Part shown: positions 18,689 to 64,000 of the stretch, piece by piece
How positions within the stretch are numbered: position 1 is the first letter of the stretch
How the letters are laid out: each line of letters starts with the position of its first letter
Origin: Pristiophorus japonicus
Taxonomy: Eukaryota
Assembly (NCBI RefSeq): GCF_044704955.1
Contig: NC_091997.1
Location: 85,498,001-85,562,000, forward strand
Direction: 5' to 3'
DNA length: 64,000 nucleotides
Position numbers and translations under genes: made by a program
Notes under the pieces: model-generated
What the model was told of the DNA's origin: nothing
The model's input: only the letters and a program-made list of their open reading frames with translations
Database searches by the model: none

Positions 18689-18717
18689 GTGAGTTTCATT
18701 GTGTTTGTCTCTCTTGA

Positions 18718-33010: not shown

Positions 33011-33131
33011 ATCAGAAAGTGATGGTGAAACAGCCACCCAGTTTTTGAAGAGCAGAAAACGAGCTAGGATTGTGAAATGGCCCTCAGTGCTTTGTTTGTG
33101 GGTATTTTCCTTCTGTTCCAACATGTTGCAG
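33011..33131 (+). CDS. IgSF receptor gene, 5'UTR + signal-peptide exon (ATG 33077; MALSALFVGIFLLFQHVA|G)
   Basis: Pyrimidine-rich acceptor ttctctacAG at 33009-10. In-frame upstream stop and gaaATGG Kozak context. Hydrophobic 18-aa leader. Phase-1 donor G|GTAAGG matches the phase-1 exon at 52408. Linkage across the 19-kb intron is inferred. Confidence 0.75.
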
Positions 33132-33221
33132 GTAAGGATCCATACTTGCAACTAATCTTCAACATGTTTCTTATCTGGAAATATCAGTTTCTATCTGTAC
33201 CTCAACAGAGAAGTATAAGAA

Positions 33222-36200
33222 TTTTTTATGTATTCGTTCCTGGGATGTGGGCGTCACTGGTAAGGCCGGCATTTATTGCCCATCCCTAATTGCCCTTGAG
33301 AAGGTGGTGGTGAGCCATCTTTTGAACCGCTGCAGTCCGTGTGGTGAAGGTACTCCCACACTGCTATTAGGGAAGGAGTTCCAGGATTTTGACCCAGCGA
33401 TGATGAAGGAACGGCGATATATTTCCAAGTCAGGCTGGTGTTTAACTTGGAGGAGAATTTGTAGTGATGGTGTTTCCATGCGCCTGCTACCCTTGTCCTT
33501 TTAGGTGGGTAAAGGTCGCGGGTTTGGGAGGTGCTGTCGATGAAGCCATGGCGAGTTGCTGTAGTGCATCTTGTCGATGGTACACACTGCAGCCACGGTG
33601 CGCCACTGGTGGAGGAAATGAATGTTTAAGGTGGTAGATGGGGTGTCGATCTAGCTGGCTGCTTTGTCCTGGATGGTGTCAAGCTTCTTGAGTGTTGTTG
33701 CAGCTGCACTCATCCAGGCAAGTGGAGAGTATTCCATCACATTCCTGACTTGTGCCTTGTAGATGGTGAAAAGGCTTTGGGGAGTCAGGAGATGGGACAC
33801 TCGCTGCAGAATACCCAGCCTCTGACCCGTTCTTGCAGCCACAGTATTTATATGGCTCGTCCAGTTCAGTTTCTGTTGAATGGTGACCCCCTGGATGTTA
33901 CTGGTGGGGGAATCGGTGATGATAATGTCGTTGACTGTCAAGGGGCAATGATTGACTCTCTGTTGTTGGAGATAGTCATTACCTGGCACTTGTGTGACGC
34001 GAACCTTATTTGCCACTTACCAGCCCAACCCTGAATGTTATCCAGGTCTTGCTGCATGCAGGCATGGACTCTTTCATTATCTGGGGAGTTGCGAATGGAA
34101 CTGAACACTGTGTAATCATCTGTGAACATCCTTACTTCTGACCTTATGATGGAGGGAAGGTCACTGATGAAGCAGCTGAAGCTCGTTTGGACTAAGACAC
34201 TGTCCTGAGAAACTCCTACAGCTATGTCCTGGGGCTGAGGTGATTGGTCTCCAACATCCACAGCTATCTTCCTTTGTACTAGGTATGGCTCCAGCCAGTG
34301 GAGAGTTTTCCCTCTGATTCCCATTGACTTCAATTTTACTAGGGCTCCTTGATGTCACATTCGGTCAAATGTTGCCTTGATGTCAAGGGCAGTTATTCTC
34401 ACAACACCTCTGGAAATCAGCTCTTTTGTCCATGTTTAGACCAAGGTTGTAATGAGGCCTGGAGTTGAGTAGTCCTGGTGGAACCAAAACTGAGCATTGG
34501 TGAGCAGGTTGTTAGTGAGTATGTGCTGCTTGGTGTCAATGACACCTTCCGTCACTTTGCTGATGATTAAGAGTATACTGATGGGGTGTTAATTGGTCGG
34601 ATTGGATTTGCCCTGCTTTTTGTGGACAGGACATACCTGTTTAGTTTTCCACATTGTCGGGTAGATGTCATTGTTGTCTCTCTCTCAGGCAGTCCCTCAG
34701 AGTCGAGAATTGCTTCCACACTAATATGAGTTCTCAGATGACTGATGAGTCTAATGTGGGACCTACAGTCTCTGTCACAGGTGGGGCAGAAGGTGGTTGA
34801 AGGGACCGGTGGGTGGGATGCTTGGGTTGTCGTGCTCCTTTCTCTGTTTGCACTTGAATTCCACGTGCTCCCGGCGAAGAGACTCGAGGTGTTCGGTGCC
34901 TTCCCGGATACTACTCCTCCACTTTGAGCGGTCTTGGGTCAGGGATTCCCAGGTGTTGGTGGGGATGTTGCACTTTTTCAAGGAGGCTTTGAGGGTGTCC
35001 TTGTAACGTTTCCTCTGCCCACCTGGGACTCATGTGCCATGTTGGAGCTCCGAGTAGAGCACTTGTTTTGAGAGTCTAATATCGGGCAAGCGGACGATGT
35101 GGCCTGTCCATCAGAGCTGATCGAGCATGGTCAATGCTTCGATGCTGGGGATGTTGACCTGAGCAAGAACACTGACATTGGTGTGCCTATCCTACCAATG
35201 GATTTTCAGGATCTTGCAGAGGCAGCACTTGTGGTACTTCTCCAGTGCTTTGAGGTGCCTGCTGTACATGGTCCATATCTCTGAAGCATATAGAAGGGCG
35301 GGTAGCACTACTGCTCTGTAGACCATGAATTTGGTGCTGGGTTTGAGGTCCTGGTCTTCAAACACTCTCTTCCTCAGGCGACCGAAGGCTGCACTAGCAC
35401 ACTGAAGGCGTTGGACTTCGTCATCGACATCTGCCCTTGTTGACAGTATTGTAGTTGTACTGGGACAGCTTGGCTAGAGGCGCAGCTAGTTCTTGAGCGC
35501 ATGTCTTCAGCACAACAGCCGGGATGTTGTCAGGTCCCAAAGCCTTTGCTGTATCCAGTGTGCTTAGCCATTTCTTGATATCATGTGGAGTGAATCGATT
35601 TGGCTGAAGACTGGCTTCTGTGATGGTGGGGACCTCTGGAGGAGCCCGATATGGATCATGCACTCAGCATTTCTGGCTGAAGATGGTTGCAAACTCTTCT
35701 GCCTTGTCTTTTGCACTCGCATGCTGGGCTCCACCATCATTGGGGATGGGGATATTCATGAAGCCTCCTCCGCCTGTTATTTTTTAAATTTTCCACCACC
35801 ATTCATGACTGGATATTGCAGGACTGGAGAGCTTTGATCTGATCCGTTGATTGTGGGATCGCTTAGCTCTGTTTATAGCATGCTGCTTTCACTATGTTGC
35901 AGCTTCCCCAGATTGGCATCTCATTTTTAGGTACGCCTGGTGCTGCTCCTGGCAAGCTCTTGTGCACTCCTCATTGAACCAGGGTTGGTCCCCTGGCTTG
36001 ATGATAATGGTAGAGTGAGGGATATACTGAGCCATGAGGTTACAGATTGTGGTGGAATACGATTCTGCTGCTGCTGATAGCTTACAGTGCCTCATGGATA
36101 CCCAGTTTTGAGCTGCTAGATCTGCTCTGAATCTATTCCATTTAACACGGTGGTAGTGTCTCACAACGCGGTAGAGGATATCTTCTGTGTGAAGATCAGT

Positions 36201-37070
36201 CCTTGTCTCCACAAGGACTGTGTGATGGTCGCTGCTGCCAATGCTGTCGTGGACAGATGCATCTGCGACAGGTAAATTGATGAGGATGAGGTCAAGTAGG
36301 TTTTTCCCTTGTGTTGGTTCTCTCACCACCTGCCACAGGCCCAGTCTGGCAGCTATGTCCTTCAGAACTCAGCCAGCTCGTAGTGTTGCTACCAAGCCAC
36401 TCTTGGTGATGGACATTGAAGTCCCCCACCCAGAGTACATTCTGTGCCCTTGCTACCCTCAGTGCTTCTTCCAAGTGGTGTTCAACATGGAGGAGTACTG
36501 ATTCATCAGCTGACAGAGGGCAGTAGGTGGTAATCTGCAGGAGGTTTCATTGATCATGTTTGACCTGAAGCCATGAGACTTCATGGAGTCAATATTGAGG
36601 ACTCCCAGGGCCACTCCCTCCCGACTGTATACCACTGTGTTGCCACCTCTGGTGGGTCTGTCCTGCAGGTGGGACAGGAAATACCCAGGGGTGGTGATGG
36701 AGGAATCTGGGATATTGCCTGAAAGGTATGATTCTGTGAGTATAACTATATCAGACTGTTGCTTGACTAGTCTGTGGGACAGCTCTCCCAATTTTGGCAT
36801 GTTCCCAGATGTTTGCGAGGAGGACTTTGCAGGGTTGACTGGGCTGGGTGTGCCGTTGTCGTGTCCGTAGCCGGTGCTGAGGTCGATGCTGGACCTCAGT
36901 CTGTCCGTGTTTATTTTTCTGATTGTTTTCTTTCGTGGTTTGGTACAACTGAGTGGCTTGCTGGGCCATTTCAGAGGGCAGTTAAGAGTCAACCACATTG
37001 CTGTGGTCTGGAGTCAGGTATAAGTTAGACCAGGTAGGAAGGCAGATTTCCTTCCCTAAAGGACATTAGG
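33222..37070 (-). mobile_element. Degenerate CR1-group LINE (distinct family) interrupted by RTE
   Basis: DIVILTESYL, VGDFNVHH, REPTQGKNLLDL, GPDNIP, FTDD and YKAQVRNVMEYS motifs. Confidence 0.8.
34676..35445 (-). mobile_element. RTE-clade LINE fragment
   Basis: Reverse complement homologous to about 25310-26070. Confidence 0.8.
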
Positions 37071-38956
37071 AAGATATAAATCAATGCTATTATTGTGTGG
37101 ATGTTTTATGTGCTTGCATCATAGTCCTTGCTGGGTCATTTTAACACGGTTTAATCATGAGCGGTCAGTTTATAATTGGCACTGGGAGAGTGAGGAGAAA
37201 GGTAAGGAGAAAATTCTTTACCAAGAGGGTTGTTTTGCCACAGGCAGTGGTTGACGCAGAGACATTTTCATCTTTTGAAGGAAAACTGGAAAACATTTGA
37301 AGCAGAGGAAGATTTGGGGCTGTGGGGAGAGCGAGGCAATGGATTTGCTCTGGCAAAGAGCCAGCACTGGCACGATGGGCCCAATTGCCTCCTTCTGTGC
37401 TGCAAACGTCTTTGGTTCAACTCCTGTCTTAAAACAGTGCAGGGATGAAGTACGAGAACAGTGCTGATCCTAATTTCCCTTACTGCAGGATCATATCTCA
37501 CTCTAACAATGAAATAGTGGAAGATTTAGAAGAGTTAGAAGGATTTGCTGATGGGCTTTAATGGAGAGAGGGGGTGGGAAGTCCGTGCAGAGCATAAATG
37601 CGGCATGGAGCAGTTGGGCTGAATGGCCTATTTCTGTGCCGTACATTCCATGTAATTCTGTGTAAGATTTTATGCTCAGGCTCGATCATTGGGAACTCGA
37701 AAGTAACAATTATATTTGATGACTCAGCCAAGCCTCACACCATTAAAGGCTGGAGACCACATTGGGCAGGGCCCACGACACCACTCGGACCAGGGCTCGA
37801 AATCAGCACCACTGGCAAAATGGAGCAGCTCAGAGCTTTCTGTACATTACAGACCGTCCATTCCGCGATTGTTCTGTTAGGAAATGGAAACCGACACTGT
37901 GTAAAGGGGGATTTGTAACCATACTCTGCAATTTGTTTTTAAACAGACTCTGTGTAATATGGGCGGTCTGCCGACAGATTCTGTTCCTCAAATGATAAGT
38001 GACGTCTGCCCCTAACCTCAGTCCAAACACGGCTGATGTCTGAGTTACAACCGAGTCTGACTGGGAGATGTGGTTTGGTGTTTATTCGAGCTCTGGCGTA
38101 ATAGTGATCTATAGTACAGACACACCTGGGTCAGTGGGGCCAAGTTTCAGTTGAGTTTCTCCTGTTTTTTTTTTTAGAGCAACTGGTTTAGAATGGAGTA
38201 TCTTAGAAATTTGAATTCTCGGCATTTAGTTTGCTCCAGTTCTAGTCAGTTAGAACAGTTTTAATTTGGAACAGAATTTTTTTTTCAAAAGGGGGTGTGT
38301 CTGGCCACTTATGCCTGTTTTCAAAGTTTAGGCAGTGAAAACTTACTACAAACTAACTGAGAATGGAGTAAGTGAAGATTTTTGTACGTTCGAAAAAACC
38401 TTGTCTACATTTTAGAAAATCAGGCGTAGGTTACAAATTAGGCGTCGGGAACGGCGGGGGGTGGGGGAGGGGTGGAGAGGGGGGGGAAGAGAAGTCATTA
38501 AATTCTACAATCAATCCTTAGTTATACTTATACAAATATTATATAAATAAATTCAACCTGAATAAAAATTTATAAGCAAAGAAAAGATTAAATAATCCAT
38601 GTTCCGACCTGTGTGAAACAGCAGCAACCTTCAGGCAGGCCTTTCATGTTGGAGACAGGCAGGGGTGGTGTCAGTGTCTCGACGGCAGCCCCCACAGCAG
38701 CAACAAGCAGCCTTCGAGCTGAGCCGTGGTGCTTCAGGCAGGCCTTCATTCCGTTAGTGGCTGGCCGGCAGCCGAGGAAGCAACACGCACGCAGCTTTCG
38801 AAGGGGGTTGAGGCCATTCGGCCACGCGATAGGGGCGGCGTCAGTGGCTCGACGGCAGCCGAAGATACAGCAGCAGCTTTCGAGCTGTGAGGGGACTGAG
38901 GCCATTTGGCCAGGGAGAGGCAGCCACATAGACAGTTTTATACTTAAATTTGCATA

Positions 38957-40158
38957 ATGGGTGCTGCATTGTCAACACCACGTATTATGCAATGGTTCGC
39001 CATCAATTCACTGCATAGGAGAGAATTCATTAGAGCTCACTGCACCAGGAATGTCGTAGCCCGTAGGCTGATGGGCAGGAGACCTTACCCACGTCGACAA
39101 TATCGAGCCAGGCGCTCGTACCTGGACATGAGCGAGGCTGAGTGTGTGAAAAGGCTGCGTTCACTGAGATCTGTGATATGGTGAGAGCAGATTTGCAGTC
39201 CAAAAGCAGAATGCCAACTGCCCTGTCTGTTGCAGCGAAGGTAACAGCTGCACTTTCTTTCTATGCCTCGGGATCGTTTCAGGCTACAACTGGAGATGTG
39301 TGTGCCATCTCTCAATGTGCAATACATGCCTGCATTTACCAGGTCACAGCTGCACTGTATGTGCGAAGGAATGACTTCATCAATTTCCCAATGACCGCAC
39401 AAGCGATCCATGAGAGGACTGCGGGCTTCTTCAGGATTGCCGGCTTCCCAAAGGTACAGGGCTGCATTGATTGTACCCACATAGCCTTGTGAGCACCTGT
39501 GGAGGATCCTGAGCAGTACCGAAATAGGAAAGGTTTCCACTCCATCGATGTGCAGCTCGTGTGTGACGACAAGCAGCGCATCATGTCAGTCGATGCGAGA
39601 TTCCCTGGCAGCACCCACGATGCATTCATCCTACGCGACAGCGTTCTATCTGACATGTTTGAGCAGCAGCCAGAAGGGCAGAGCTGGCTACTGGGAGACA
39701 AAGGGTACGGCCTGACCACCTGGCTCATGACACCCCTACACGTGACACGGACAGAAGCTGACCGTCAATACAACATGGCGCACATTGCGACGCGCAGCAT
39801 CATTGAGAGGACCATTGGCATATTGAAACAGCGTTTCCGATGCCTGGACCATTCCGGAGGACAGTTGCTATACTCTCCTCAGATTGTCGGTCACTTCACT
39901 GTTGTGTGCTGCATGCTTCATAACTTAGCCATCATGAAGCATCAGGAGCTGGTAATGGAACCAGAAGACCTACGTGAGGGTCCAGTGCGTGATGATTGTC
40001 TTACGGAAGAGCAGGATGTGGATGATAACGACGATCAGGAAAGCATGCAAGTGCCTGATGCCAGAGCACGAGGTCGGAGGAGGTCCGTCCATCGTGCCCC
40101 TTTAACGATTGCTCGAGCCTTGCGCCAGCAACTCATCCGTGAACGCTTTAACTACTGA
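38957..40158 (+). pseudogene. Harbinger (HARBI1-like) DDE transposase; frameshift near 39162 and TGA at 39490
   Basis: GCIDCTHI, NRKGFHS, PGSTHDAFIL, LGDKGYG and IERTIGILKQRFRCL motifs. Confidence 0.93.
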
Positions 40159-40678
40159 TGCCTGAGGGCTCTGCGATCACTGTTGCGCATGGACATGTTT
40201 ATTCTTTGCAGTTGTTCCGACGTTGTGTTGTGTTAATGGAATATGAAACAGTTTTAATGAAAAAATATTTTATTGAAAAGTTAACGTCAGTCTAATAAAA
40301 TATTTGTTGCATCAAACTATACTTTTTAATATGACTCTTGAAGATCACTTAAAAACATTAAGGTCACTTATTAACTTGTAAAGTTACAAAAGTTACAAAA
40401 CAATCGCAATGTGAAAAATCTTACACTCTTAAGATCACTTAAACTTCAAGATCACTTTTTACGTGCAAAATTAAATAAGGTACAAAAAAATGTGAGAGCA
40501 TTTACACTATAAGATCACTTAAAAACCATAAGGTCACTTATAAATTGTAAAGTTACAAAACTTACAAAACAATTTCAATTTGAAAAACGCTACTACAGCT
40601 ACATCAAGAACAAGAACAAAAGCAGCAAAGAAAGGCTGCATCCATGTCTCATCCATATCTCAGTGAATGTTCACTTAC

Positions 40679-42378
40679 TCATAGGGGTGTTATTTGATTG
40701 ACCGGGCTGTGTGCCCTTATTGCAGCAGCTACCTCAACCAGGCCCTCCCTGATGGCCTGTGCCATCATTTGCAAGCCCTTCCTGACCGCCTATGCTGTCG
40801 ATTGCACTCCCTCGGACATTCCCTCCCTAAGTTCCCGTGCCATTACTGCTATTTCTCCTGTCAGGACCGACAACTCTTCACCCACTGCACTGACGCCACC
40901 GATGAGTGATCGGGTAAGCTCATTGGTCTCCATACCCAACGCCACAACCTGAGCCGCATCTGTTGCACGCTGCATCTCAGGAGAGCGTGTCTCCAATCTC
41001 CTTCTCCTCTGCCTGGGTCTGCCTCGTGGCACCACTACACTGGGAGGCGCGGGCACGGACAGTGGGAAGCTCGGTGTTGCAAGCGGCACCACTACACAGG
41101 GAGGCGCGGGCTGGGACTGTGGGACGCTCTGTGTTCCAGACGGCAGAACTAGAGGGAGAGACTCGGGCTGGAATGCTGGGACGCTCTGTGTTGCAGACGG
41201 CAGTACTAGAGAGAGAGGCTCGGGCTGGGATGGTGGGGCGGTCGGTGTTCCAGACGACAGCATTCGAGTGCGAGCCATGGGCTGGGATGTTGGACGAATG
41301 AGTATAAACTGCTCCATGATATCAGCAGCAGCACTGGGACCCGCAGCGTCGGAATCAAAATCATAGTAGATGGAGCCAGAACCTATGCGGGAGGGAGGCG
41401 CAGGCTCGGATGGTAGTGCACTGACTGCAGAATGCTGCATTTTACCAGCAGCACCACTGGGACCCGCAACATCGGAAGCAAAACCATTGAAGGTGGAACC
41501 AAGACCTATGCTAAGGGTTGAAACTCTGATGCCCCTTGATGGGGGCTCATAAACATTCATTTGGAAGCTCTCCCCTGCAGACATTTCAGTCATCGCCGCC
41601 ATCATCCAGTCTGGTTCGTCCGCATCTGGTTGTACTGGTTCTTGTTCTGTACCCTCAGGATCCTCAGGGTTGGCAGCAGCAGCAGCACCATCGTCATCAT
41701 CATCATCATCGATATCATCATCATGTTATGCAAAATATATCAGAACAGTCAAATGTTTAACAGCAAGAGAGGGGGCCGGATGGATGGCATGAGTACTCTC
41801 ACAAATAGCAGGTTAGGCAGCAGGTTGATTTAAAGGGCCACGATGCATTTTCAGGACTTACCCTCTTCCTCGTGTGCAGGCCCAGCTTGTGCTGTACTGA
41901 TTGCTTTTCTCCATGTACCACTCATCATAGCAGCTACCCTTTGTTCCAAGGGTGTCAGTGGATGCAGATTGGGCATGCCTCCTCCTGTCCGAGTTGCCTT
42001 CCTTTTGTTGTGGGCCAATTTCTTCTGCAAAGAGTAAAATATAATTTTTTACAGAGTGTGTCAGTCTGCAAGGTGGGACATACAGATAGCCAGGTTACAA
42101 TTACGATTAAATTAAAAATGGGAAATATTACTTACACTAACTACTTGACCAAGGTCATGCCATTTCTTTTTACACTGCCTTCCAGGTCTCATGGTATGCA
42201 CCACTGCGCAGTAATCTTCTGCAACTTGGTTCCACCGTTTCTTCATTTCTTTTGGTGCCACTTTTATGCGACCCCTATTGCTGGTATCTAGCTCCTGCCA
42301 TCTCTGCTCAATTACATTGACTAATATCTCTACTTCCTCATGCAAGAAATTCTTTGTTCTTGGTGGACGTTGATCCAT
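40679..42378 (-). pseudogene. Harbinger Myb/SANT-like (MSANTD) DNA-binding protein, 3 exons (42378-42136, 42024-41862, 41727-40679)
   Basis: NF..EE..LV...W..VA...R..RQCKKKWHDL and RTGGG motifs; GTAAGT donors. The exon-3 acceptor is mutated and there is a TAG at 40790. Confidence 0.88.
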
Positions 42379-43189
42379 TGCAAAGTTGAATTGGCACTCT
42401 TATTTCTCAAAACACACAGTCCTTAATTTGCAATCACCAATGCAGCAGCGGTTCTGCAAGTTTAGCAGTGAAAAGCTGAACTCACTGATTTCAGCAGGTG
42501 ATTTATTCAACAGTGCTGCTTAAAGCATTCCCTCACACACAAAAATATCACAAAAATTAAATCACAAGCCTTTCCAGGGGTCCAAGAGACAAATCTTCAC
42601 TTTTCCTCCAGTCCCTTTAAAAATGGCCGAGTGCCAATGTTTGTTTCACACTGCGTGTGTGTGCACGCTCCAACACGCATGCGCAGGGTTGCCGGCACGA
42701 CATTGGCTCATTTGAATTAGACCCGCCCCCCACTGCTTAGGGAATCGGCGCGAGTGTCTGGCTCCACCCCCCGCTGTGATGTGCGCGCCGCGCCAAGCTG
42801 AGTTAGAGCTCCAAGGAGCCGGAGAATCTCGCAGTTTTTTCCTGCGCACTTTTAGGCGTGAAGAACAGGCGTCCAGCTCGGGGCTGCGCCGTTTTCAGCG
42901 CGGTCCTAAACTTGGGGCCAGTGAGTGGAGAGTTTCTAGGTGCAGTCTGTCAGGGCCATTACAGGGGGGGGGTTGCGTGTGTCAGATGCTCAAGTTGCAA
43001 ACACAGATCCATAACAGCCGCTCCATGATACCCTCTGTTCAGGAATTTAACCCAACCAATCAGAGCTCTGCTAACTTCTCCATCGCAGCTTATCATCTTA
43101 ACTAGCAGAAAATGAGCCTCTGAACACAATGCAAACAGAAATTATCTTTCTGATAATCTAAATGTGCTGATCAGAAACCTGTTGATTAC

Positions 43190-48400: not shown

Positions 48401-49687
48401 TTTAAACCCTTCCCAACAACACTAGCAAACCACCCCGCCAGGATATTGGTCCCAGCTCTGTTGAGGTATAACCCGTCCGGCTTGTACAGATCCCACCTCC
48501 CCCAAAAGCGGTCCCAATGCCTCAGAAAACTAAAGCCCACCCACCTGCACCATCTCTCCAGCCATGTATTCATCTGCTCTATCCTTCTATTTCTATACTC
48601 ACTAGCTCATGGCACTGGGAGTAATCCGGAAATTACTACCTTTGAGGTCCTGCTTTTTAATCTCTTGCCTAGCTCCCTAAACTCTGCCTGCAGGACCTCA
48701 TCCCTCTTCCTACCTACGTCATTGGTACCAATGTGGACCACGACCTCTGGCTGTTCACCCTCTTCCCCCAGAATGACCTCCAGCCACTTTGTGACATCCT
48801 TGATCCTGACACCAGGGAGGCAAAACCATCCTGGAGTCACGTCTGCAGCTGCAGAAACGCCTGTCTTCTCCCCTGACTATCGAATCCCCTACCATTATAG
48901 CTCTTCCATTCTTCTTCCTCTCCCCCCCTGTGCAGCTGAGCCACCCGTGATGCCATGGACTTGGCTCAGGCTGCACTCCCCAGAGCCACCATCGCCCTCA
49001 CCGGTACTCAGAACAGGGTACTGGTTGGAAAGCGAGATGGACTCAGGAGACTCCTCCACTACCTGCCTAGACATCCTCTTCTGTCCAGGGGTCACCCACT
49101 CCCTATCTGCCTGCACACTCTTAAACTGTGGGGTGACCGCCTCTAGAAATGTGCTATCCACGTAGCTCTCAGTCTCGCGGATGCACCGCAGTGACTCCAG
49201 CTGCTGCTCAAGCTCCAAAACACGGAGCTCAAGTTGGTGCAGCTCAGCTAGAGACACCTCATGCACACGTGGTCATCCAGGCTGCGCAAAGCATCCAGGA
49301 TTTCCCACATGCCACAGGATGTGCAATCCACGGGACTACCCTGCCATGCCTCTAGTTACATTCGCAACTATCGAGTAGATGTAAACTCTAAACCTTAGCA
49401 AAACACAGCCAGCCGCTACTCAGCAAACAGCTGATTTAGTTCATTGGTTCTCCTTAGATAATAAAGATCACATATATTTAATTGTAGTTCCTAACTTATA
49501 ACAGTGCCCAAGGTTTCTTAAAGAAAAGAAAGAAAAGAAAAAGAAAAAATACTCACCAATCCACCAGCCAATCACTTACCTGCTTGGCTGTGACGTCACA
49601 CTTTGATTTTAATTGTTTTTTCTTTGTTCTTTTACCCTGCTGCAGCTGGCTGCTCCCGATCTGCCGCTGCTCCAAACTGCCCACCCT
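45421..49687 (-). mobile_element. Near full-length CR1 LINE (5'UTR, ORF1 coiled-coil + SGNH esterase, EN, RT), degenerate and apparently chimeric
   Basis: LELRVLELEQQLESLRCIRE, GDSIVRG, VHIGTND, NARSI, GDFN and YLDFQKAFD motifs; (CATAGAAA)n tail. Confidence 0.92.
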
Positions 49688-49699
49688 TTGTACTTCCTC

Positions 49700-50160
49700 G
49701 GCATATATTGCGACATTCCAATGATCCTCTGCAAATACTTAGATATGTCAAAGGGCCTCTGCAAATATTGATACAGCCCAATGACACTCTTGAAATATTG
49801 ATACTTTCAAGGAACCTCTGCAAATAATGATACATTCCATTGACTTTCTGCAAAAATTGATACATTCCAAAGGCTTTCTGCAAAAATTGATGCATTCCAA
49901 TAACCCTCTGCAAATATTGATAAATTCCAAGGGACCCCCTGAAAACATTGATACATTCCAAGGGACCCTCTGCAAATATTGATACATTCCAATGACCCTC
50001 TGCAATTATTGATACTTTCAAGGAAACTCTACAAATATTGATACATTCCAAGATACTGCAAATATTGATACATTCCAAGATACTGCAAATATTGATACAT
50101 TCCAAGGGACTCTGTGCAAATATTGATACGTTCCAAGATGCTGTAATTATTGATACACTT
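49700..50160. repeat. About 30-bp minisatellite (AAATATTGATACATTCCAA core); further units at 45330-45420
   Basis: Directly visible tandem units. Confidence 0.88.
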
Positions 50161-50499
50161 CTGTCATAACTTGGCACAAGTGCTTTGTGTAACAAGGTGG
50201 GGAGCACAAGTATGACCACTGATACACCATCAGTGCCCACACATTCCAGGTGGCTCAATAATTGTGCAACTATTCACTACTGCGGGCAAAGTGGGGGAAT
50301 TACCTCAACTCACTTCACATGCCAGCTTCTAAGGAATCACCGGGTGAGGGGGACCTTGTGTGGGGAGTCCCCGCTCGTGGTATCCCTCCTCTCCTCGATG
50401 ATGTTGGTCTTGTACAAAGGGTTATCTGAGGCTCCACCCTTTGGAAGTCAAGTTGGAAACTCCTATCAATCTGATGCACCTAGGGGTTTGCTACATAGG

Positions 50500-51045
50500 G
50501 TTACATAGGATGTACAGCACAGAAACAGGCCATTCGGCCCAACCAATCCATTCCAGTGTTTTTGCTCCACTCGAGCCTCCTCCCGTCTTTCCTCATCTAA
50601 AACTATCAGCATAACCTTCTATTCCCTTCTCCCTCATATGCCTGTCTAGCCTCCCCTTAAATTCATCTACATTATTCACTTCAACCACACCCTGCGGTAG
50701 CGAGTTCCACATTCTCACCACTCTCTGGGTAAAGGAGTTTCTTCTGAATTCCCGATTGGATTTCTTGGTGACTATCTTATATTGATGGCCTCTAGTTATG
50801 CTCTTCCCCACAAGTGGAAACATTGTCTCCGTATCCACTCTATCAAAATCGCTCATCATTTTAAAGACCTCTGTTAGGTCACCCCTCAGCCTTCTTTTTT
50901 CAAGATAAAAGAGACCCAGCCTTTTCATCCTTTCCTCATGTGTATACCCTCACATTTCTGGTATCATCCTTGTAAATCTTCTCTGAACCCTCTCCAGTGC
51001 TTCCATATCCTTTTTATAATATGGCGACCAGAACTGTACGCAGAA
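50500..51045 (-). mobile_element. CR1 3' fragment
   Basis: RRLRGDLTEVFK...FTQRVVRMWNSLP. Confidence 0.85.
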
Positions 51046-51606
51046 CAGGTGCAGCGCCTAAGACCCGAAACCCTCGGGACCGAGGCCATTCCGGATTCTG
51101 GGTTTTTCTGGACTTTCAATTTGCTTTCTGCCCAGGTTTGAGTATTTCCGGATTTCGGAACATCTGAAAGGAGGGAGGGGGGGGGGGCGCGGTGGTGGAT
51201 TCCCACCAAGAAGCTGTTCGGGCTGCCTGGCCCCGCTGCCAAGGATGTTGTCGGGCGGGGCTCTGCCGGAAGGTTGTTGTCGGGTGGTCCCCGCCGAGGA
51301 TGATGTCGGCAGGTAGGCCCCGCCCAGGAGGTCATCGTCAGGTGGGCCCCGCCGAGGAGATCATCATCGGGTGGGTTGGTGAGGAGACCTCGAGGTAAGG
51401 GCAGCGATGTTGAGGTGAGCGGGGCTGGGTGAGCTGTAGCGAGGCCCAAGGTTGGGCAGCAACGGGGCCCCGAGGTGGGCAGGGTCATCGAGTCCAAATT
51501 TCCAGAACATTTTACAGATTCTGGACGACCCTACCACCAATCGTCCTGGAGTCTGGATTCCGGAACATTCCGGATTCTGGACTCCGGATTCTCGATGCTG
51601 CACCTG
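51046..51606. mobile_element. Tc1/mariner-type MITE
   Basis: TIRs CAGGTGCAGC / GCTGCACCTG. Inserted at the TA of a CR1 sequence (CAG-TA-CTCTAAG), with the left TA mutated to AA. Confidence 0.75.
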
Positions 51607-52407
51607 TACTCTAAGGCCCTGGAATTGGTGGAAGCTAAGTTCTGCCCAAAGGACCGCTGAGATCCTGACGGTACTTTGGCCGGAAGTTTCATGGAAAAAT
51701 CTTGGAAAGTCCGCCCGGCGGCAAAAATGGGACTTACGCCCTGAATCTGGGCGGCAGCGGGAGGTAGTTCCCATTCTCGGCGGCAAATGCAATCCTCAGC
51801 TAAGTACGAGGGCGGAACTGATAAAATTAAACATTTTCACAAAATTAAAAAAACACTAGAAATCCTTCAGCGGACCCCATCCACCCGAATCCCTGCAAAA
51901 GAAATAAAGAAAAGAACTGCACTTACCTTTTATTGCAGGTCTTCATACTTACCGTTGAGGTTAGACCTGCCTTCACGCGGCGGGCTTGTCCCCTGCTGGA
52001 GCGGAGGACCGCCCGGACCAAACTGTCAGCATTTACAATCATTCTCTCTGAAACTGACCCGAACTTCAGGATGTTGCGCATCTAAACGCGGAAATCCTGA
52101 CGTTGCGGTCAGTCATTCAACACTCTGACACAGGCGACGCTGTGGATGCCCTACCACCGACCCCACCCCGTATTGCCGGCAATCAGTGAAATCAGTGCAG
52201 CTTTCCCACGCTAATTTTGCTGTTAAACACTCCATGAAATGTTAAGCCTTGTTAGATTAGGTGTAACTGGGGTTTTGACCAACAGTGTATTGACTGCAAA
52301 AAAAAAATCACGATTCCTTAATTTCCTGTGAGAGGCTTTGTTTCACGTTGACTGTTTAATGAGCTTTCCTGTCTCTATCTCTATCCCATTCTGCCCTTTC
52401 CCCGCAG

Positions 52408-52809
52408 GATCCACTTATCTCTTCTTCCGAGGACCAGGAGATGTCACCACTCTGCAATGCAACGTGCCCACCGGTGCTGGGAATAAAGTAACCTTGTGCA
52501 GCTCCAGTGATCCCGGGTCAGGAATGGGTGAAATAAAATGTCAGCACCCAAAGAACGAGAAGCCATGTGATGAAAATATCGGTCCTCAAGGGAGAAAAGG
52601 ATACAGTGAGCCAGAGTGTACGAAATGCAAATTAAATGACGACCAAACAGAGTCTCTGACATTCGCTGTGAAGATGATTAACTCGATGGTGTTTACCTGC
52701 ATGGCTCAGGATTGCACAGAAGGAGGGGCATTGGAGTGTCCGTCCTGGCTCACACTGTCACAGCCGGGATGTGAAAACCACGACTTGTTCTTTGTGATAA
52801 CCCAGGATG
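52408..52809 (+). CDS. IgSF receptor exon: atypical cysteine-rich Ig-like domain D1 (134 codons, 10 Cys)
   Basis: Acceptor ctttccccgcAG and donor G|GTAGGT give a symmetric phase 1-1 exon of 402 bp, fully open. GDVTTLQC and VFTCMA resemble the Ig B- and F-strand Cys motifs. Confidence 0.8.
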
Positions 52810-53460
52810 GTAGGTGCACTGGGGCAGTACCGCGGTAGGGATCGGGACAGTATCGGGGGCGGGGAGGGATCGGGACAGATATTCGGGAAGTATCGGGGGA
52901 GCGATCGGCAAGGTATTGCGAGAACATATAATGTAAGGTATTAGGTGAGACATTAGGGGAGATTTTTGGAGGCGTTGGGGAGATACTGGAGGAGGTTTTA
53001 GTGCGGATAGCTGTCATTGGGAAAATGTTAGAGCCTTTATTAAGATGAAATTACCGCGTATGCAGATAAAGAGTAAATAGTGAGAAGTAGCTAGCACGGG
53101 TTTCAAACTGTCCAGGAGGTAACAGACATGGTAAGTGGGGGAATGCAGTGGATGTAGTGTACATGACCTAGTGTATAAGACCTAGCTCTGCCAAGCCAGT
53201 GTGGCGGTTGGTGTGCAACCGCCAGCACACATTAAAACAATCGACGCACAGGAATCTTCCATCCTTCACAGTGTAGTTCGGACCTGCAATATTAGGTTCT
53301 TCATTGAAACACCCGTGAACTTTTTGACGTGGAAGCAAGTCATCCTCGATTGGAGGGACTGCCTATGATGATGAGTGTACATGGTCTTTAGGAAATTCTT
53401 TGATAAAGTCACACTAGAGATGATTATATTAACAAATATTATTTTCAATGTTGTTTATAG

Positions 53461-53928
53461 ATTCAGCTGATATATCTTCTATTGAAGAAAACTCCTTGTC
53501 GCTGACACTGTCAGAGGGAGAGAATGTGACTTTACCCTGCCAGTATGAGAATATAAAACTACTCGCCTTCACTCTGTTTTGGTTTAGATCTGGAAACGTC
53601 AATAAGTGTCTGCACTCTGTTTTCATTGACTCTCAGGGGCCATATTCTAACCCACTCTGTTGTGTGGATAGAGAGTCGTCACAAAGAATCTCTAACCAAA
53701 GCTCACACAATCCTTTGGTTAGCCGCCAGTCTCATAACCTTACTATTCACTCAGCGGGCCTGGTGGACACTGGGAGGTATCTCTGTGCTGTACACAGTCA
53801 GGATTCGGGGAAACATGTCTGGAAGATTGCAGCAAACATCTCCCTTGTGACAGAGCCCAGTGCAGAAACTTCAGACACTCCCACCTCAACATCTGGAATA
53901 TCTTTAGTGACCAGCAGCATAACTCATA
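53461..53928 (+). CDS. IgSF receptor exon: V-set Ig domain D2 plus S/T-rich stalk
   Basis: GENVTLPC...LFWFR...NLTIHSAGLVDTGRYLCAV contains the canonical C-W-C and DxGxYxC motifs. Acceptor ttgtttatAG (alternative CAG at 53464-66, same phase). Phase-1 donor A|GTAAGT. Confidence 0.92.
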
Positions 53929-54217
53929 GTAAGTGATACAATCCAGAATATGATGTGAACCATTTAATATCAATAATTCAATATAAATAATATAAATAAT
54001 TCTTTCAGGCAATGTCCCATATGTGAGATTCCAAATCAATTGTCTAGTTTTGTACCCATTAGACGTTGGTTCGATTTTCTTCCTTCGCAATTGCACTTTT
54101 CCAGATTGTAACCGGAAAAGTATGTTCCTCGGCCCAGGTAACCAGTGTGATCAGCTGTACATATAAGACGGCATTGTACAAACTGAACTTAATGTTGCTT
54201 CTCCTCTGCATTTCCAG

Positions 54218-54331
54218 ACCCTGCCACCGCTGTGAACGTAGCCATAGTGTGTCTGATTGTACTCATTTGCATTGTTGGGATAGTTTGCATTATTGGGGTC
54301 GTTTGCCGAAGGAAATGACAATCTGCCAAAG
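54218..54331 (+). CDS. IgSF receptor transmembrane exon (NPATAVNVAIVCLIVLICIVGIVCIIGVVCRRK*QSAK) with in-frame TGA at 54316-54318
   Basis: Acceptor ctgcatttccAG, phase 1. Uncharged hydrophobic stretch followed by RRK. Tandem phase-1 donors at 54332 (GTAAAG) and 54338 (GTAAGC). Confidence 0.88.
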
Positions 54332-54689
54332 GTAAAGGTAAGCAAGAGCGTTAAAATGTTTGATCTAAATCTATAAAATTGTAAGAGCAGACTCCTTACA
54401 TAGATTCTTACATTTATCTTTCCCATCTTACTGTTGTGAAGAATCCTCAGCACCAGGACCCAGGTAGGGCTGGGATTCGATCAGTTTTTGGGCAGACTTT
54501 CTGTATAATTTTGCTCATTTAATGGAACATTTACAGGTTACTTTTCTTTGCTAACTGTAGGGCCGGTGATGTGCAGCTGACACAAGTGGCTGAATGTAAG
54601 TGACTAGAATTGCTGGCCAGCTCTTCCGATCCTGGCCCTTTGAGAGTTGAAACTAAAAGCACACATGGTGTTCCCGCCTTTCTGTCCAG

Positions 54690-54876
54690 GTTTCCCGTAC
54701 TCTGTGGTTCCCAGGAAGGATCAGAGCGATGACAACGAGCCTGTTGCGTACTCGGTGACAAGAGTTCCAACGCCGTCGAGCCAGCCAAGGCCTGGTGAAG
54801 GAATGGAGAGCACTGGCCCAAACATTGACTCTACAGAGCATGTGTACTGTTTGATCAAAGAGTCAGTGGTCAAAGG
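54690..54876 (+). CDS. IgSF receptor cytoplasmic exon 1 (FPYSVV, VAYSVT, HVYCLI Tyr motifs)
   Basis: Acceptor ctttctgtccAG (phase 1) and donor GG|GTAAGC (phase 2). Frame is open. Confidence 0.85.
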
Positions 54877-55209
54877 GTAAGCAGAGTGACAGCTGTCACC
54901 CCTCGGCTACAGTCAACACTGACCACAACTTTGTTTTAGGATGGAGGGTTAGAAGATTGTTAATGTAATGAAGGTGAGGGGAGCCCATGCTAGCAAATGG
55001 GTTACTTTTCCACTTTGGCCACACAGTATCACTTGGAGCACTCCAGATTAGGCACAGCGTAAAACTCCCTCTGGACTGTCCCAACAATGTTCCTCAACTC
55101 CAAGGTCAGGAGAGAGGTCAGACATCTTCACTTCTCACACCTCCTGTACTATTTGAGTGGAAGGGCCAATTTAGAGGTAGTTTTGTACTGTGGCTCACAT
55201 GAGCTGCAA

Positions 55210-56225
55210 ACTGGATCGAGAGGACCAAACTCATCGCAGATCCCTGAAAGTAGCAGGCCAGGTGGATAAGGTGGTTAAAAAGGCATACAGAATGCTTGCC
55301 TTTATTGGCCGGGGCATAGACTATAAGAGCAGGGAGGTTATGCTTAAATTGTATAATACTTTGGTTAGGTCACAGCTGGAGTCCTGCGTGCAGTTCTGGT
55401 CGCCGTATTATAGGAAGAACATGATTGCATTAGAGAGGGTGCAGAGGAGATTTACTAGGATATTGCCTGGAATGGAGAATTTTAGCTATGAGGAGAGATT
55501 GGATAGGCTGGGTTTGTTCTCATTGGAACAAAGGAGGCTGACAGGAGACCGCATTGAGGTGTACAAAATTTTGAGGGGCCTGGATATAGTGGATAGCAAG
55601 GCCTATTTCCCTTGGTGGAGGTGTCTATTATGAGGGGGCATAGCTTTAAGGTGGTGGAAGGTTTAGAGGGGATTTGAGGGGAAGCATTCTTCACGCAGAG
55701 GGTTGTGGGGGTCTGGAGCTCACTGGCTGGAAGGGTGGTGGATGCAGAAACCCTCACCACATTTAAAAGTTGCTCGGATGGATACTTAAAATGCCGTAAC
55801 CTGCAGGGTTACGGAACTAGAGCTGTTCAGTGGGATTAGACTGGAAAACCTCTTGTTGGCTGGCGCAGATATGATGGTAAGTACTGCAGGGAATCGAATA
55901 CGGCTGGAGTGATCTCCTGGACTAGTTTTGATCACCAGGATGGGTCGGAGAGGAATTTTCCCAGATTTTTATTTCCCCAATTGACCTGGTTTTTGCCTCT
56001 CCCAGGAGATCACATGGCTCCGGTTGGGGTGGAGTGTAGAATGTCGCAGTTGTGTGGGGCGGACTGATTGGGCTGGGTGCTCTTTACCTTTCCGCCATTG
56101 TTCATTGTTCAAAGGTTTATATGTAACCTTCAGGGCTGCTGAACGAGGGCCGTGTGGCTCTTTGTCGGACACGATGGGTCGAAATAGCCTCCTTCTGCGC
56201 TGTAAATTTCTATGTTTCTATCTTT
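55210..56225 (+). mobile_element. CR1 3' fragment in receptor intron
   Basis: KKAYRMLAFIGRGI...CVQFWSP and (TTCTATGT)n tail. Confidence 0.85.
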
Positions 56226-56679
56226 CTAAGTGAAAGTGATAGTCAGTCAGAAACAGACAGAGAGACAGATAGATATTGAAAGAGGACTTTTATTACCAAT
56301 AGTCTGGACTTGATTTGAGAACAGATCCTAAAATATGAATGGGCCGTACTAATCTATTCCACCACCCAGGACAAAACATTTCCAGGTTTTGCATCCAATC
56401 TCACAACCGGACAGTTCTAAGTCAGGGTTCGATGGCCCGAAGCTGTGTAAAGCATTTTGCCCTCTGACCTGATAGTGCTCCTTTATCCCAACATCAGAAT
56501 AGCATCACTGTGCCAGTATGAAGTTATTTAAAAAATAAACTTCTCAGGACAATATTTTGGCTTACTTGACCATAATGATCAATTTTGTCCAAATATTTTA
56601 CTGAATGATTGGCGGTTTTAGGCAAGGAATTGGATTGAGACTGAAAACTCTTTGCAGAGAGGACTGCTTACATAGCAGA

Positions 56680-57132
56680 CTCAGAGAGATAAAGAGAGAG
56701 AGTGAGAGAGAGAGACAAGGAGTCAAGAACAGAGAGTGACAGAGAGAAAGATAAAGAGAGAGAGAGAGCAACACGGAGAGAGAAAGAGAGACAGACAGAA
56801 ATAGACAATGAGATGGGGATGCAGATGGGGATGAAATGACAGACGGAGAACAAGAAACAGAGACAGAGAGACAGACACAGAGAGACATGGAGGGAGACAG
56901 TGAGATAGACAGAGGGAGCGAGACAACGAGAGAGACGGAGACGGGNNNNNNNNNNNNNNNNNNNNNNNNNNNNNNNNNNNNNNNNNNNNNNNNNNNNNNN
57001 NNNNNNNNNNNNNNNNNNNNNNNNNNNNNNNNNNNNNNNNNNNNNNNNNNNNNNNNNNNNNNNNNNNNNNNNNNNNNNNNNNNGAGAAAGAGAGAGAGTC
57101 AGCGAGACAGGCAGAGAGAGACAGAGACAGGC

Positions 57133-57167
<35 letters not shown>

Positions 57168-57300
57168 AGGAGGCTGGCAGAGAGAGAGACAGGGAGAGAG
57201 ACCATGCGAGAGAGAGACAGATGGAGAGAAAGAGAAAGAAACAGAAAGAGAATCGGTGATGCAATCCGAGAGTCAGAGAGTGACAGACAGAATCAGGGAA
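56680..57300. repeat. GA-rich microsatellite containing an assembly gap (N 56946-57083)
   Basis: Directly visible. Confidence 0.95.
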
Positions 57301-57449
57301 AATGAATGAGGGAATTTCAGGCTGGGTTAGACTCAAATCCAGGCCAGTGGGGAGAAAGTGACTGAATGTAGTTTCCACTTACAGCCGTTTAATATTGTTT
57401 GAATCATATGTTACTCATTTTTCACACGTTTAATTTTCTGTTTTCCCAG

Positions 57450-57484
57450 TGATGACGGCAAAACTGAAATCCAGGCAGTAAAAT
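57450..57484 (+). CDS. IgSF receptor cytoplasmic micro-exon (GDDGKTEIQAVK)
   Basis: Acceptor ttctgttttcccAG and donor T|GTAAGT. The 35-bp phase 2-1 exon exactly bridges the flanking exon phases. Confidence 0.8.
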
Positions 57485-57573
57485 GTAAGTCATGGCAATC
57501 TTTCAGTATCTTTCATTATCTGTCCCCACATGGAAGTGAAACCCATCAAACGCAATCTCCTCTTAATTTCTAG

Positions 57574-57839
57574 GCAGAGACCGCACGGACCATATACCGC
57601 AGGTTGAAACCTCTTTAGCCATTGAATTCAAATCAGACGGCCAATCGCAGCCCAAAGAGGACAGTAAGGAGGATCCCTTTGCTCTGTCTAATGAGCAGAC
57701 TTATTCTTTGATAGGTTGCCCGGGGACAGGGAGCCCAGGAGACACAGAGACAAGGTCTCGGCTGGAGGAAGATGATCCACAACCTGGCCCGTTAGAGATG
57801 GAAGAAAATCCTATTTATGCTAAAATAGAGGAAGCCTGA
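57574..57839 (+). CDS. IgSF receptor last coding exon (QTYSLI, NPIYAKI motifs; TGA 57837-57839)
   Basis: Acceptor ctcttaatttctAG, phase 1. About 88 open codons ending EENPIYAKIEEA*. Confidence 0.82.
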
Positions 57840-63189: not shown

Positions 63190-63228
<39 letters not shown>

Positions 63229-63830: not shown

Positions 63831-64000
63831 AGTAATGGGAGGGAACTCAGGCAAGACAGATCACATTCTTGCAACCACCTACAAGGGACATCGTTGCCGT
63901 GGATGATATCCAGAAGTCACTATTCATTTCATACCCAATAAACCTGTTAATTCTTACACAATGCCCCATCTATGGGGGGGTGGCGAGGCGGGGGAAGGAT

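What the first reader, a model, noticed from the sequence alone, without database searches (positions are those of the whole stretch)
33077..57839. Multi-exon Ig-superfamily receptor of inhibitory type hidden among TEs
Seen: seven exons (33077-33131, 52408-52809, 53461-53928, 54218-54331, 54690-54876, 57450-57484, 57574-57839) have canonical GT-AG sites and compatible phases. They total 1527 nt (509 codons including the stop): leader, Cys-rich Ig-like domain, V-set domain, S/T stalk, TM and a tail of about 165 aa with five Tyr motifs. Established: this layout is typical of inhibitory immune receptors (CD300/PIGR-like, NITR, skate MDIR, BTLA/PD-1). Inference: I cannot assign it to any of these, so it may be a chondrichthyan-specific family.
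Basis: partly seen in the sequence, partly recalled or inferred. Interest (0 to 1): 0.8.

Follow-up and report, generated by a model that had tools for sequence, protein, structure and literature searches.

The report
Stop-truncated copy of shark-only receptor gene

Summary
The exons are real, but the model is wrong in two places.

- **Exons 1-3.** Leader, Cys-rich domain and V-set domain with stalk match a public Pristiophorus japonicus protein (UniRef "uncharacterized protein isoform X3") at 100%.
- **Exon 4.** It carries an in-frame TGA at 54316-54318, straight after the membrane helix. Every relative has Arg, Lys or Asn there. The open frame ends after 341 residues.
- **Missed exons.** The corrected structure has nine exons and 1590 nt.
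- **Assembly gap.** It lies in a GA-repeat intron and hides no coding exon.
- **Public annotation.** It skips this copy's own membrane and tail exons and joins exons 1-3 to those of the next copy downstream.
- **RNA.** The contigs that lie here carry paralogues' letters, so expression of this copy is not shown.
- **Family.** It turned up only in sharks (13 species), always unnamed or misnamed, and I found no paper on it. Long-tailed members have five conserved tyrosine motifs ending in MEENPIY. Short-tailed members mostly have an Asp in the membrane helix.
- **Motifs.** No sawshark copy has a textbook ITIM.
- **Earlier notes.** First readers of this scan noted the stop and further copies downstream on the same piece.

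Most likely this is a young duplicate losing its tail.

The parts
33077..33131 (+). Exon 1: start codon and signal peptide, ending in phase 1 at a CAG|GTAAGG donor
   Evidence: Identical to residues 1-19 of P0041. The leader is conserved across the shark family. No read evidence for the 33131|52408 joint was obtainable.
52408..52809 (+). Exon 2: family-specific Cys-rich N-terminal domain. It has 10 Cys here; 9 are conserved in the family and Cys 102 of the exon peptide is private to this copy.
   Evidence: 100% to P0041 residues 20-152. It has no Pfam or PDB sequence match. Only shark proteins match it among 1.84 billion representatives. An RNA contig ends its match exactly at 52408.
53461..53928 (+). 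Exon 3: V-set Ig domain (5 invariant Cys) plus Ser/Thr stalk, with an alternative acceptor at 53467
   Evidence: Pfam V-set 34.1 bits against a cut-off of 26. 100% to P0041 residues 154-308. Fold Z 12-13.5 to V domains. RNA joints at 52809|53467 and 53928|54218.
54218..54337 (+). Exon 4: membrane helix without a charged residue, then RRK, then the premature stop.
   Evidence: Translation. 94% to paralogue membrane exons. Both donor forms occur in annotated paralogue isoforms, as ..SAKGSSAPG.. and ..SAKGKGSSAPG...
54316..54318 (+). In-frame TGA (codon 342). Relatives have Arg here, or Asn or Lys in two species.
   Evidence: No annotated protein contains this copy's exons 4-7 at 100%.
54442..54463 (+).
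   Evidence: It fits the paralogue proteins' ..KGSSAPGPR... It has AG and GT borders.
54561..54595 (+).
   Evidence: tblastn 100% over 13 residues. RNA joint 54595|54690, GT..AG.
54690..54876 (+). Exon 5: tail, tyrosine motifs 1-3 (FPYSVV, VAYSVT, HVYCLI)
   Evidence: 97% to paralogues. Motifs are conserved across shark orders. RNA joint 54876|57450.
56946..57083 (.). Assembly gap inside a GA-rich tandem repeat, within an intron
57450..57484 (+). Exon 6: 35-nt tail exon
   Evidence: 100% to paralogues. RNA joints on both sides.
57574..57839 (+). Exon 7: tail end with motifs 4 (QTYSLI) and 5 (MEENPIYAKI) and the normal stop. An in-frame alternative acceptor at 57715 removes 47 residues, including motif 4.
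   Evidence: 94-97% to paralogues. RNA joints 57484|57574 and 57484|57715. The short form occurs in annotated isoforms P0015, P0016 and P0041.

Best explanation
The window holds one copy of a multi-copy, shark-restricted receptor gene family.

**What a complete long-tailed member is**
- A type I surface protein with a signal peptide, a nine-cysteine N-terminal domain of unresolved fold (probably an Ig/FN3-like beta sandwich), a V-set Ig domain, an O-glycan-type Ser/Thr stalk, an uncharged membrane helix and a tail of about 190 residues.
- The tail carries five conserved tyrosines. The last lies in an invariant MEENPIY (NPxY) site.
- Sister genes have nearly the same outer part but a different membrane exon, usually with an Asp, and a short tail. 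The family is therefore built like paired receptors.
- Inferred mechanism: the outer domains bind an unknown ligand. Src-type kinases phosphorylate the tail tyrosines, which then recruit SH2 or PTB proteins. The short-tailed forms signal through a membrane partner.

**What this copy is**
- It has nine exons, not seven. In the reference sequence a single TGA replaces the Arg codon right after the stop-transfer RRK.
- From its own exons it can give only a 341-residue product that is anchored but has no tail. A transcript spliced like its paralogues would carry the stop about 300 nt before the last exon joint and should be degraded by nonsense-mediated decay (inferred).
- I read it as a young tandem duplicate that has just lost its tail, that is, a pseudogene in the making. 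Its first three exons are annotated as alternative 5' exons of the next copy downstream.
For: **Stop codon and structure**
- In-frame TGA after the membrane helix. Relatives have R, N or K at that place in all 10 aligned proteins.
- Corrected nine-exon structure from paralogue proteins and RNA joints.

**Annotation**
- P0041 equals the window's exons 1-3 at 100%. It then continues with another copy's membrane and tail residues (RQSVK, IEESMVK, RSWLEE).
- No annotated protein contains this copy's exons 4, 5 or 7 unchanged.

**RNA**
- At all 32 listed variant places, the only RNA contig differs from the window.
- All 9 amino-acid-changing differences turn the window's residue into one carried by an annotated paralogue.

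**Family range**
- The exon 2 domain matched 5 representative clusters among 1.84 billion proteins, all from sharks.
- The word and profile searches found 22 and 27 proteins in 13 shark species and nothing else.

**Paired build**
- Short-tailed members with a membrane Asp occur in Pristiophorus, Heptranchias, Heterodontus and Scyliorhinus torazame.
- Outer domains group by species with 100/100 support, with short- and long-tailed forms together.

**Age of the copy**
- The laid contigs differ from the window by about 0-2.5%, in introns as in exons. An otherwise intact tail is therefore what a recent stop would leave.
Against: - No read of this copy itself was seen. The TGA rests on the assembly alone. 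The RNA contigs that cover 54316 do so within about 25 letters of their ends, where differences are not listed.
- There is no second disabling change. All splice sites, the whole outer part and the tail frames are intact.
- Public annotation uses exons 1-3, which may reflect real transcripts.
- Tail-less or null variants can be kept by selection in paired receptor clusters.
- The signalling direction and the partners are inferred from motifs only.
Confidence: 0.62

Rival explanations
1. It is a working tail-less receptor. The stop is kept because a 341-residue surface protein with the family's outer part but no signalling tail acts as a decoy or dominant-negative partner within the paired receptor cluster.
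For: The stop falls exactly after the stop-transfer RRK, leaving a tidy anchored product. The outer-part exons are intact and used in annotation. The family already has short-tailed members.
Against: A transcript spliced like the paralogues would have the stop far upstream of the last exon joint, which makes it an expected target of nonsense-mediated decay (inference). No AATAAA or ATTAAA stands in the 350 nt after exon 4 as I read them. No contig with this copy's own letters was found in the one RNA run. The family's true short-tailed forms use a different, conserved membrane exon.
Confidence: 0.18
2. It is an intact long-tailed receptor. The TGA would then be an assembly error, a private allele of the sequenced animal, or read through during translation.
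For: All tail exons are open and keep the five tyrosine motifs. Everything else about the gene is intact.
Against: The TGA is in the sequence. The public annotation avoids these exons and borrows another copy's tail, which fits a stop in the public assembly too. Given about 0-2.5% divergence from its paralogues, open tail exons are expected even without selection. Nothing here points to readthrough or selenocysteine.
Confidence: 0.08
3. Exons 1-3 now serve as an alternative 5' module of the downstream paralogue. Transcripts start at 33077, skip this copy's own exons 4-7 and splice into the next copy's membrane and tail exons, giving a working chimeric long-tailed receptor (RefSeq-type isoform X3).
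For: P0041 has exactly this make-up.
Against: I could not see what evidence the annotation pipeline used, and such chains can arise from protein homology alone. The laid stretch could not show a joint leaving the window. The one joint seen at the exon 3 donor goes to 54218, within this copy or its homologue.
Confidence: 0.2

Closest known systems
Pristiophorus japonicus 'uncharacterized protein isoform X3' (UniRef100_UPI00398F1420, P0041) and its sawshark paralogues (for example P0032, P0046, P0021)
   Same: Residues 1-308 are identical to the window's exons 1-3. The paralogues share every exon at 94-100% for exons 2 and 4-7, and 77-93% for exon 3, whose stalk varies.
   Different: The annotated protein takes its membrane helix and tail from another copy. 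This copy's own exons 4-7 carry the TGA and private residues and are in no annotated protein.
Shark orthologues annotated as uncharacterized: XP_048473125.1 (Rhincodon typus), XP_067829442.1 (Heptranchias perlo), LOC121271932 (Carcharodon carcharias), LOC144480561 (Mustelus asterias)
   Same: Same domain order, nine-Cys first domain, five-Cys V domain and five tail tyrosines with the MEENPIY end.
   Different: They share 42-65% identity. They have no premature stop. Some have a textbook ITIM at the first tyrosine.
CD300 / pIgR / skate MDIR type V-domain receptors
   Same: Multigene immune-type receptors with V domains carrying extra cysteines, and with long-tailed and charged-membrane forms.
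   Different: The C-strand (Y)WCR signature given for CD300 (PMC3031540) is absent: FWFR here and FWIT in other sharks. No CD300 chain is among the 60 best PDB sequence matches, and pIgR matches only part of the domain at E 0.011. The first domain has no counterpart.
Paired receptor families in general (KIR, SIRP, PILR, Siglec-5/14, CEACAM1/3)
   Same: Near-identical outer parts on long-tailed and short-tailed, charged-membrane genes in one cluster. Outer parts are homogenised within each species.
   Different: The membrane residue is Asp rather than the usual Lys or Arg. The tail motifs are not textbook ITIMs in the sawshark. There is no sequence kinship.
Teleost NITR
   Same: Non-rearranging V-domain receptors in multigene clusters with inhibitory-like and activating-like forms.
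   Different: There is no J-like GxGTxL motif in the G strand (it reads GKHVWKIAANISL). No NITR appeared in any search. The first domain is different.

Membership tests
Shark nine-Cys / V-set receptor family (unnamed; RefSeq 'uncharacterized protein') | Conserved leader plus N-terminal domain with nine conserved cysteines | tested here: met
   Exon 1 is 83-100% identical to family leaders. Exon 2 matches at E 8e-82 to 1.5e-18 and only to family members. All nine Cys are present, plus one private Cys.
Shark nine-Cys / V-set receptor family (unnamed; RefSeq 'uncharacterized protein') | V-set domain with five invariant cysteines, followed by a TSTSGIS-type stalk | tested here: met
Shark nine-Cys / V-set receptor family (unnamed; RefSeq 'uncharacterized protein') | Translated long tail with five tyrosines ending in MEENPIY | tested here: not met
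   The exons and motifs are present, but the in-frame TGA at 54316 lies upstream of them. This copy is a disrupted member.
CD300 / pIgR / MDIR | [quoted passage not shown] | tested here: not met
   The sequence reads LFWFRSG and the family consensus is LFWITSG. No CD300 chain is in the PDB top 60.
NITR | V domain with a J-like GxGTxL motif (feature taken from my own knowledge) | tested here: not met
   The G strand reads GKHVWKIAANISLVTE.
ITIM-bearing inhibitory receptors | At least one (S/I/V/L)xYxx(I/V/L) motif in the cytoplasmic tail | tested here: not met
   A pattern scan found none in the tail of any sawshark copy. One is present at the first tyrosine in Carcharodon, S. torazame (P0020), Rhincodon, Stegostoma and Hemiscyllium, and by eye as LPYSVV in Heterodontus P0024, which the position filter missed. 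The window's motifs are FPYSVV, VAYSVT, HVYCLI, QTYSLI and PIYAKI.
ITSM / ITAM receptors | TxYxx(V/I), or YxxL/I-x6-12-YxxL/I | tested here: not met
   The pattern scan found none in any family tail.
Paired receptors | A sister gene with a near-identical outer part but a charged membrane helix and a short tail | tested here: met
   P0021 (sawshark) is 93-95% identical in exons 2-3, has ..LICIDGALCII.. and a short tail. It groups with this copy in the tree. Association with an adaptor is not testable here.
Pseudogene (unitary, non-processed) | A disabling change in an otherwise recognisable gene, with loss of expression | tested here: inconclusive
   One nonsense codon is present and there are no further lesions. 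No contig with this copy's letters was found in the single RNA run, but contigs drop rare variants.

The most novel reading that the evidence does not exclude
The family is an undescribed shark-only paired receptor system. Its nine-cysteine first domain would be a new ligand-binding module, and gene conversion would keep the outer parts of its long- and short-tailed genes alike. This copy's stop would then be a selected tail-less decoy allele rather than decay.
Probability: 0.12. Interest if true: 0.65.

Novelty: new variant of a known kind. Interest (0 to 1): 0.4.

Why it matters
**For this locus.** The result is a correction. The hidden gene is real but has nine exons. It is stop-truncated, partly merged with its neighbour in public annotation, and not shown to be expressed.

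**For comparative immunology.** The family behind it is the more useful result.
- It is a receptor family found in 13 shark species from seven orders and nowhere else in the databases searched.
- It has a first domain that no profile library, solved structure or AlphaFold run could place.
- It has a tail whose five tyrosines are conserved across shark orders.
- It has short-tailed sisters with an Asp in the membrane helix.
- Its outer parts are homogenised within each species.

This is the pattern of pathogen-driven paired receptors, seen here in a lineage where such systems are barely studied. It gives concrete proteins to test for ligands and adaptors.

Tried and rejected
**Sequence searches on the first domain**
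- Pfam and PDB sequence searches with exon 2 found nothing.
- The word search with exon 2 alone found nothing, but it is limited to proteins of 73-233 residues.
- A family profile of the first domain against PDB gave only weak Ig I-set E-F strand matches at E 0.07-0.7.
- hhalign of the first-domain profile against the family's own V-domain profile gave probability 0.2%.

**Structure**
- AlphaFold on the first domain, alone and within the whole protein, gave pLDDT 45 and about 24.
- A fold search with the poor model gave FN3/Ig-like sandwiches at Z 6.9 or lower, which is within noise.
- The V domain fold search gave only generic V domains and no family signal.

- The Atlas could not read the window's own peptide. 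With the whale shark homologue it listed only generic V-set clusters: JAML, VSIG4, BTLA, CD7-like and G6f-like.

**Other checks**
- tblastn of all family proteins against the window found no second copy and no short-tail membrane exon here.
- The promoter scan is a bacterial consensus and says nothing here.
- Four paper searches found no description of the family.

Window sequence went to the tools exon by exon, and whole-protein work used public database proteins.
- The gap was not filled.
- The 33131|52408 joint could not be tested, because read laying allows one call of 6 kb.
Full report
**What was checked first**

There is a TGA at 54316-54318, directly after the membrane helix. It is codon 342, so the open frame from the ATG gives 341 residues, not 508. 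The finding I was given does not mention this. A separate first-reader note on the same window does (s1-879285).

**The assembly gap**

The N run at 56946-57083 lies inside a GA-rich tandem repeat, between exon 5 (ends 54876) and exon 6 (starts 57450).
- In all ten aligned relatives, the residues of exon 5 are followed at once by those of exon 6 (..VKG-DDGKTEIQ..), so no coding exon is expected in the gap.
- An RNA contig joins 54876 to 57450 with GT..AG ends.
- First-reader notes give tail spans of 3203-3233 letters for three other copies, against 3150 here (unchecked). This fits a gap of roughly the stated size.

**How the searches were run**

I built, searched and folded no joined protein from the window. 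Whole-protein steps used public database proteins returned by the tools.

**What the domains are**

- Exon 3 is a V-set Ig domain. Pfam gives 34.1 bits against a cut-off of 26. The best PDB sequence matches are TCR V-alpha at E 3e-5. The AlphaFold model of that part has pLDDT 70-86 and aligns to V domains at Z 12-13.5 (Nav beta-4, TCR V-delta, nectin-1 D1, CD96) with no family-level signal.
- Exon 2 matches nothing in Pfam or PDB.
- Exons 4-7 have no significant Pfam match; exon 4 gave one chance-level hit at E 3.6.

**Relatives**

HMMER with exon 2 against 1.84 billion representative proteins gave five hits at E below 1e-18 and nothing else below 0.001. They come from Heptranchias perlo, Pristiophorus japonicus, Mustelus asterias and Rhincodon typus.

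Word and profile searches with family proteins brought 22 and 27 proteins. Besides the four species above, they come from:
- Carcharodon and Cetorhinus
- Scyliorhinus canicula and S. torazame
- Heterodontus
- Hemiscyllium and Stegostoma
- Chiloscyllium punctatum and C. plagiosum

All are named 'uncharacterized', or misnamed 'serine-rich adhesin for platelets-like' or 'GPI-anchored protein pfl2'. The weakest hit is at E 1e-112 and there is nothing below it. No ray, chimaera or bony fish protein appeared. The word search sees only proteins that share 5-residue words, so for the V domain and the tail this absence is weaker evidence than for exon 2.

**This copy in public annotation**

Among 49 family proteins fetched by then, P0041 (P. 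japonicus 'isoform X3', 482 aa) is 100% identical to the window's exon 1, exon 2 and exon 3 (residues 1-308).

From residue 309 on, P0041 carries another copy's residues: PAITVNV, RQSVK, IEESMVK and RSWLEE. The window has PATAVNV, *QSAK, IKESVVK and RSRLEE. No annotated protein holds the window's exons 4, 5 or 7 unchanged; the best matches are 94%, 97% and 97%. So the annotation skips this copy's membrane and tail exons and chains its first three exons to a neighbouring copy. First-reader notes place paralogous copies at about +23 to +31 kb, with further five-tyrosine tails at +96 kb and +216 kb, on the same piece.

**Corrected structure**

Paralogue proteins read ..RRKRQSAKGKGSSAPGPRAGDVQLTQVAECFPYSVV... 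The window encodes this in several pieces:
- exon 4 running to 54337;
- a 22-nt micro-exon at 54442-54463;
- a 35-nt micro-exon at 54561-54595;
- exon 5 starting at 54690.

All have AG and GT borders. The RNA run shows the joint 54595|54690 and no joint 54331|54690. The result is nine exons and 1590 nt.

**RNA evidence and its limit**

One public run (coded X1) holds 22% of the sampled words of 52300-57900. Its contigs are spliced, so it is RNA. Joints seen:
- 52809|53467
- 53928|54218
- 54595|54690
- 54876|57450
- 57484|57574
- 57484|57715, an in-frame alternative

However, at all 32 listed variant places the only contig differs from the window. Of the 15 differences inside exons, 6 are silent. 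All 9 that change a residue turn it into the residue of an annotated paralogue, some of the P0032 type and some of the P0046 type. The contigs therefore come from paralogues laid at 95-99% likeness. They confirm the family's splice pattern at homologous places, but not that this copy is transcribed.

Whether they read T at 54316 cannot be told, because that place lies within about 25 letters of the contig ends, where differences are not listed. One 570-letter contig ends its match exactly at 52408 and has 329 more letters upstream.

**The family**

- *Tail.* Alignment across shark orders shows five conserved tail tyrosines. The first is x(P/A)YSV(V/I/F), and it is lost in Heptranchias. The others are VAY(S/A)V(T/S), EHVYC(L/V)(I/L), xxYSxI and MEENPIY.
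- *Motif scan.* A pattern scan finds a textbook ITIM only at the first tyrosine, and only in Carcharodon, S. torazame P0020, Rhincodon, Stegostoma and Hemiscyllium; by eye Heterodontus P0024 also reads LPYSVV. There is none in any sawshark copy, and no ITSM or ITAM anywhere. The last motif is an NPxY site, which from general knowledge binds PTB domains or serves endocytosis.
- *Short-tailed members.* They use a different membrane exon, preceded by a Cys, with an Asp in the helix in four species. Examples are ..LICIDGALCIIRRK.. in the sawshark, with similar forms in Heptranchias, Heterodontus and S. torazame. Mustelus has Asn there and Hemiscyllium has His.
- *Tree.* A tree of the outer part (22 rows) groups all eight sawshark rows at 100/100. 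I left out P0001 for its duplicated module, P0053 as too short after the cut, and P0023-25 for lacking the first domain. In each species with both forms, the short- and long-tailed forms group together. Because the two membrane exons are each conserved across species, the outer parts must be homogenised within species. That is the paired-receptor pattern.

**The first domain**

- Nine cysteines are conserved across the family, and the window has a private tenth at residue 102 of the exon peptide.
- The V domain has five invariant cysteines. The sum of 14 suggests one disulfide between the two domains (inference).
- The fold is unresolved. AlphaFold gave pLDDT 45 alone, with seven strands, and about 24 in the whole protein.
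- The family profile against PDB found only Ig I-set domains (titin, LRIG1, CEA) at E 0.07-0.7 over the E-F strands.
- Profile against profile, it shows no likeness to the family's own V domain.
- The poor model aligns to FN3/Ig sandwiches at Z 6.9 or lower, which is within noise.
- The phase 1-1 exon and the ..TLQC.. and ..VFTC.. patterns fit an Ig-like sandwich, but this is not shown.

**Comparison with known families**

CD300-type V domains are defined by a (Y)WCR motif and a second disulfide (PMC3031540). The window reads FWFR and other sharks FWIT, so that feature is not met. No J-like motif of the NITR type is present. The Atlas look-alikes of the whale shark member are generic V-set clusters. 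Four paper searches found no description of the family.

**Reading**

The most economical account is a young tandem duplicate. It differs from its paralogues by about 0-2.5%, in introns as in exons. A single nonsense change, possibly CGA to TGA at a CpG (the paralogues' codon was not seen), cut off the tail. The intact tail exons do not argue for function, because so little time has passed. A transcript spliced like the paralogues would have the stop about 300 nt before the last joint and should be lost to nonsense-mediated decay. That would fit the missing contigs, but this is inference.

The alternatives are a kept tail-less decoy, a reference-only allele or assembly error, or real use of exons 1-3 as a 5' module of the next gene. 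They are not excluded and are scored in the rivals.

**Surroundings**

The 19-kb first intron holds a Harbinger-type DDE transposase remnant at 39499-40158. Upstream lie LINE reverse-transcriptase and esterase frames at 10632-14460 on the minus strand. 'Hidden among TEs' is therefore fair.

Noticed in passing
window 18530-18672 (+): Terminal exon after a good acceptor. It encodes a Cys, then a membrane helix with a Lys (..CSLISTVKYVVIVSGTLTIVILWLL..) and a short basic tail ending in a stop. No family protein matches it, so it is not this family's short-tail exon. A first-reader note covers it (s1-879292).
   Followed up: partly
window 57715 (acceptor inside exon 7): In-frame alternative acceptor that removes 47 residues, including the fourth tyrosine motif. 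It is seen as an RNA joint (57484|57715) and in annotated paralogue isoforms (P0015, P0016, P0041).
   Followed up: partly
window 53461/53467 and 54331/54337: Tandem alternative splice sites 6 nt apart, at the exon 3 acceptor and the exon 4 donor. Both forms occur in annotated paralogue isoforms, and the 53467 form occurs in an RNA contig.
   Followed up: partly
family proteins P0021, P0001, P0027, P0029 (not in the window): Short-tailed family members have a conserved membrane exon with an Asp in the helix and a Cys just outside it. This is unusual for a receptor chain, where Lys or Arg is the rule. Their outer parts group by species with the long-tailed genes.
   Followed up: partly
Heptranchias perlo P0001 (XP_067829355.1): The first domain plus V domain module is duplicated in tandem, giving four outer domains, and the membrane helix bears an Asp. 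The public name 'serine-rich adhesin for platelets-like' is a misnomer caused by the Ser/Thr stalk.
   Followed up: no
window 39499-40158 (+) and 10632-14460 (-): A DDE_Tnp_4 (Harbinger/PIF-type) transposase remnant lies in intron 1. LINE frames with reverse transcriptase and a GDSL-esterase domain lie upstream.
   Followed up: partly
window 62001-64000: Composition is strongly skewed: GC 0.615, GC skew 0.75 and AT skew 0.55. A 571-codon open frame on the minus strand has no Pfam match. This is probably a purine-rich simple repeat.
   Followed up: no
window 55105-56226: Very high summed contig depth in the RNA run (5,000-25,000, against 100-800 on the exons), with many contigs at 95-99% likeness. 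This looks like a transcribed, high-copy repeat inside the intron between exons 5 and 6.
   Followed up: no
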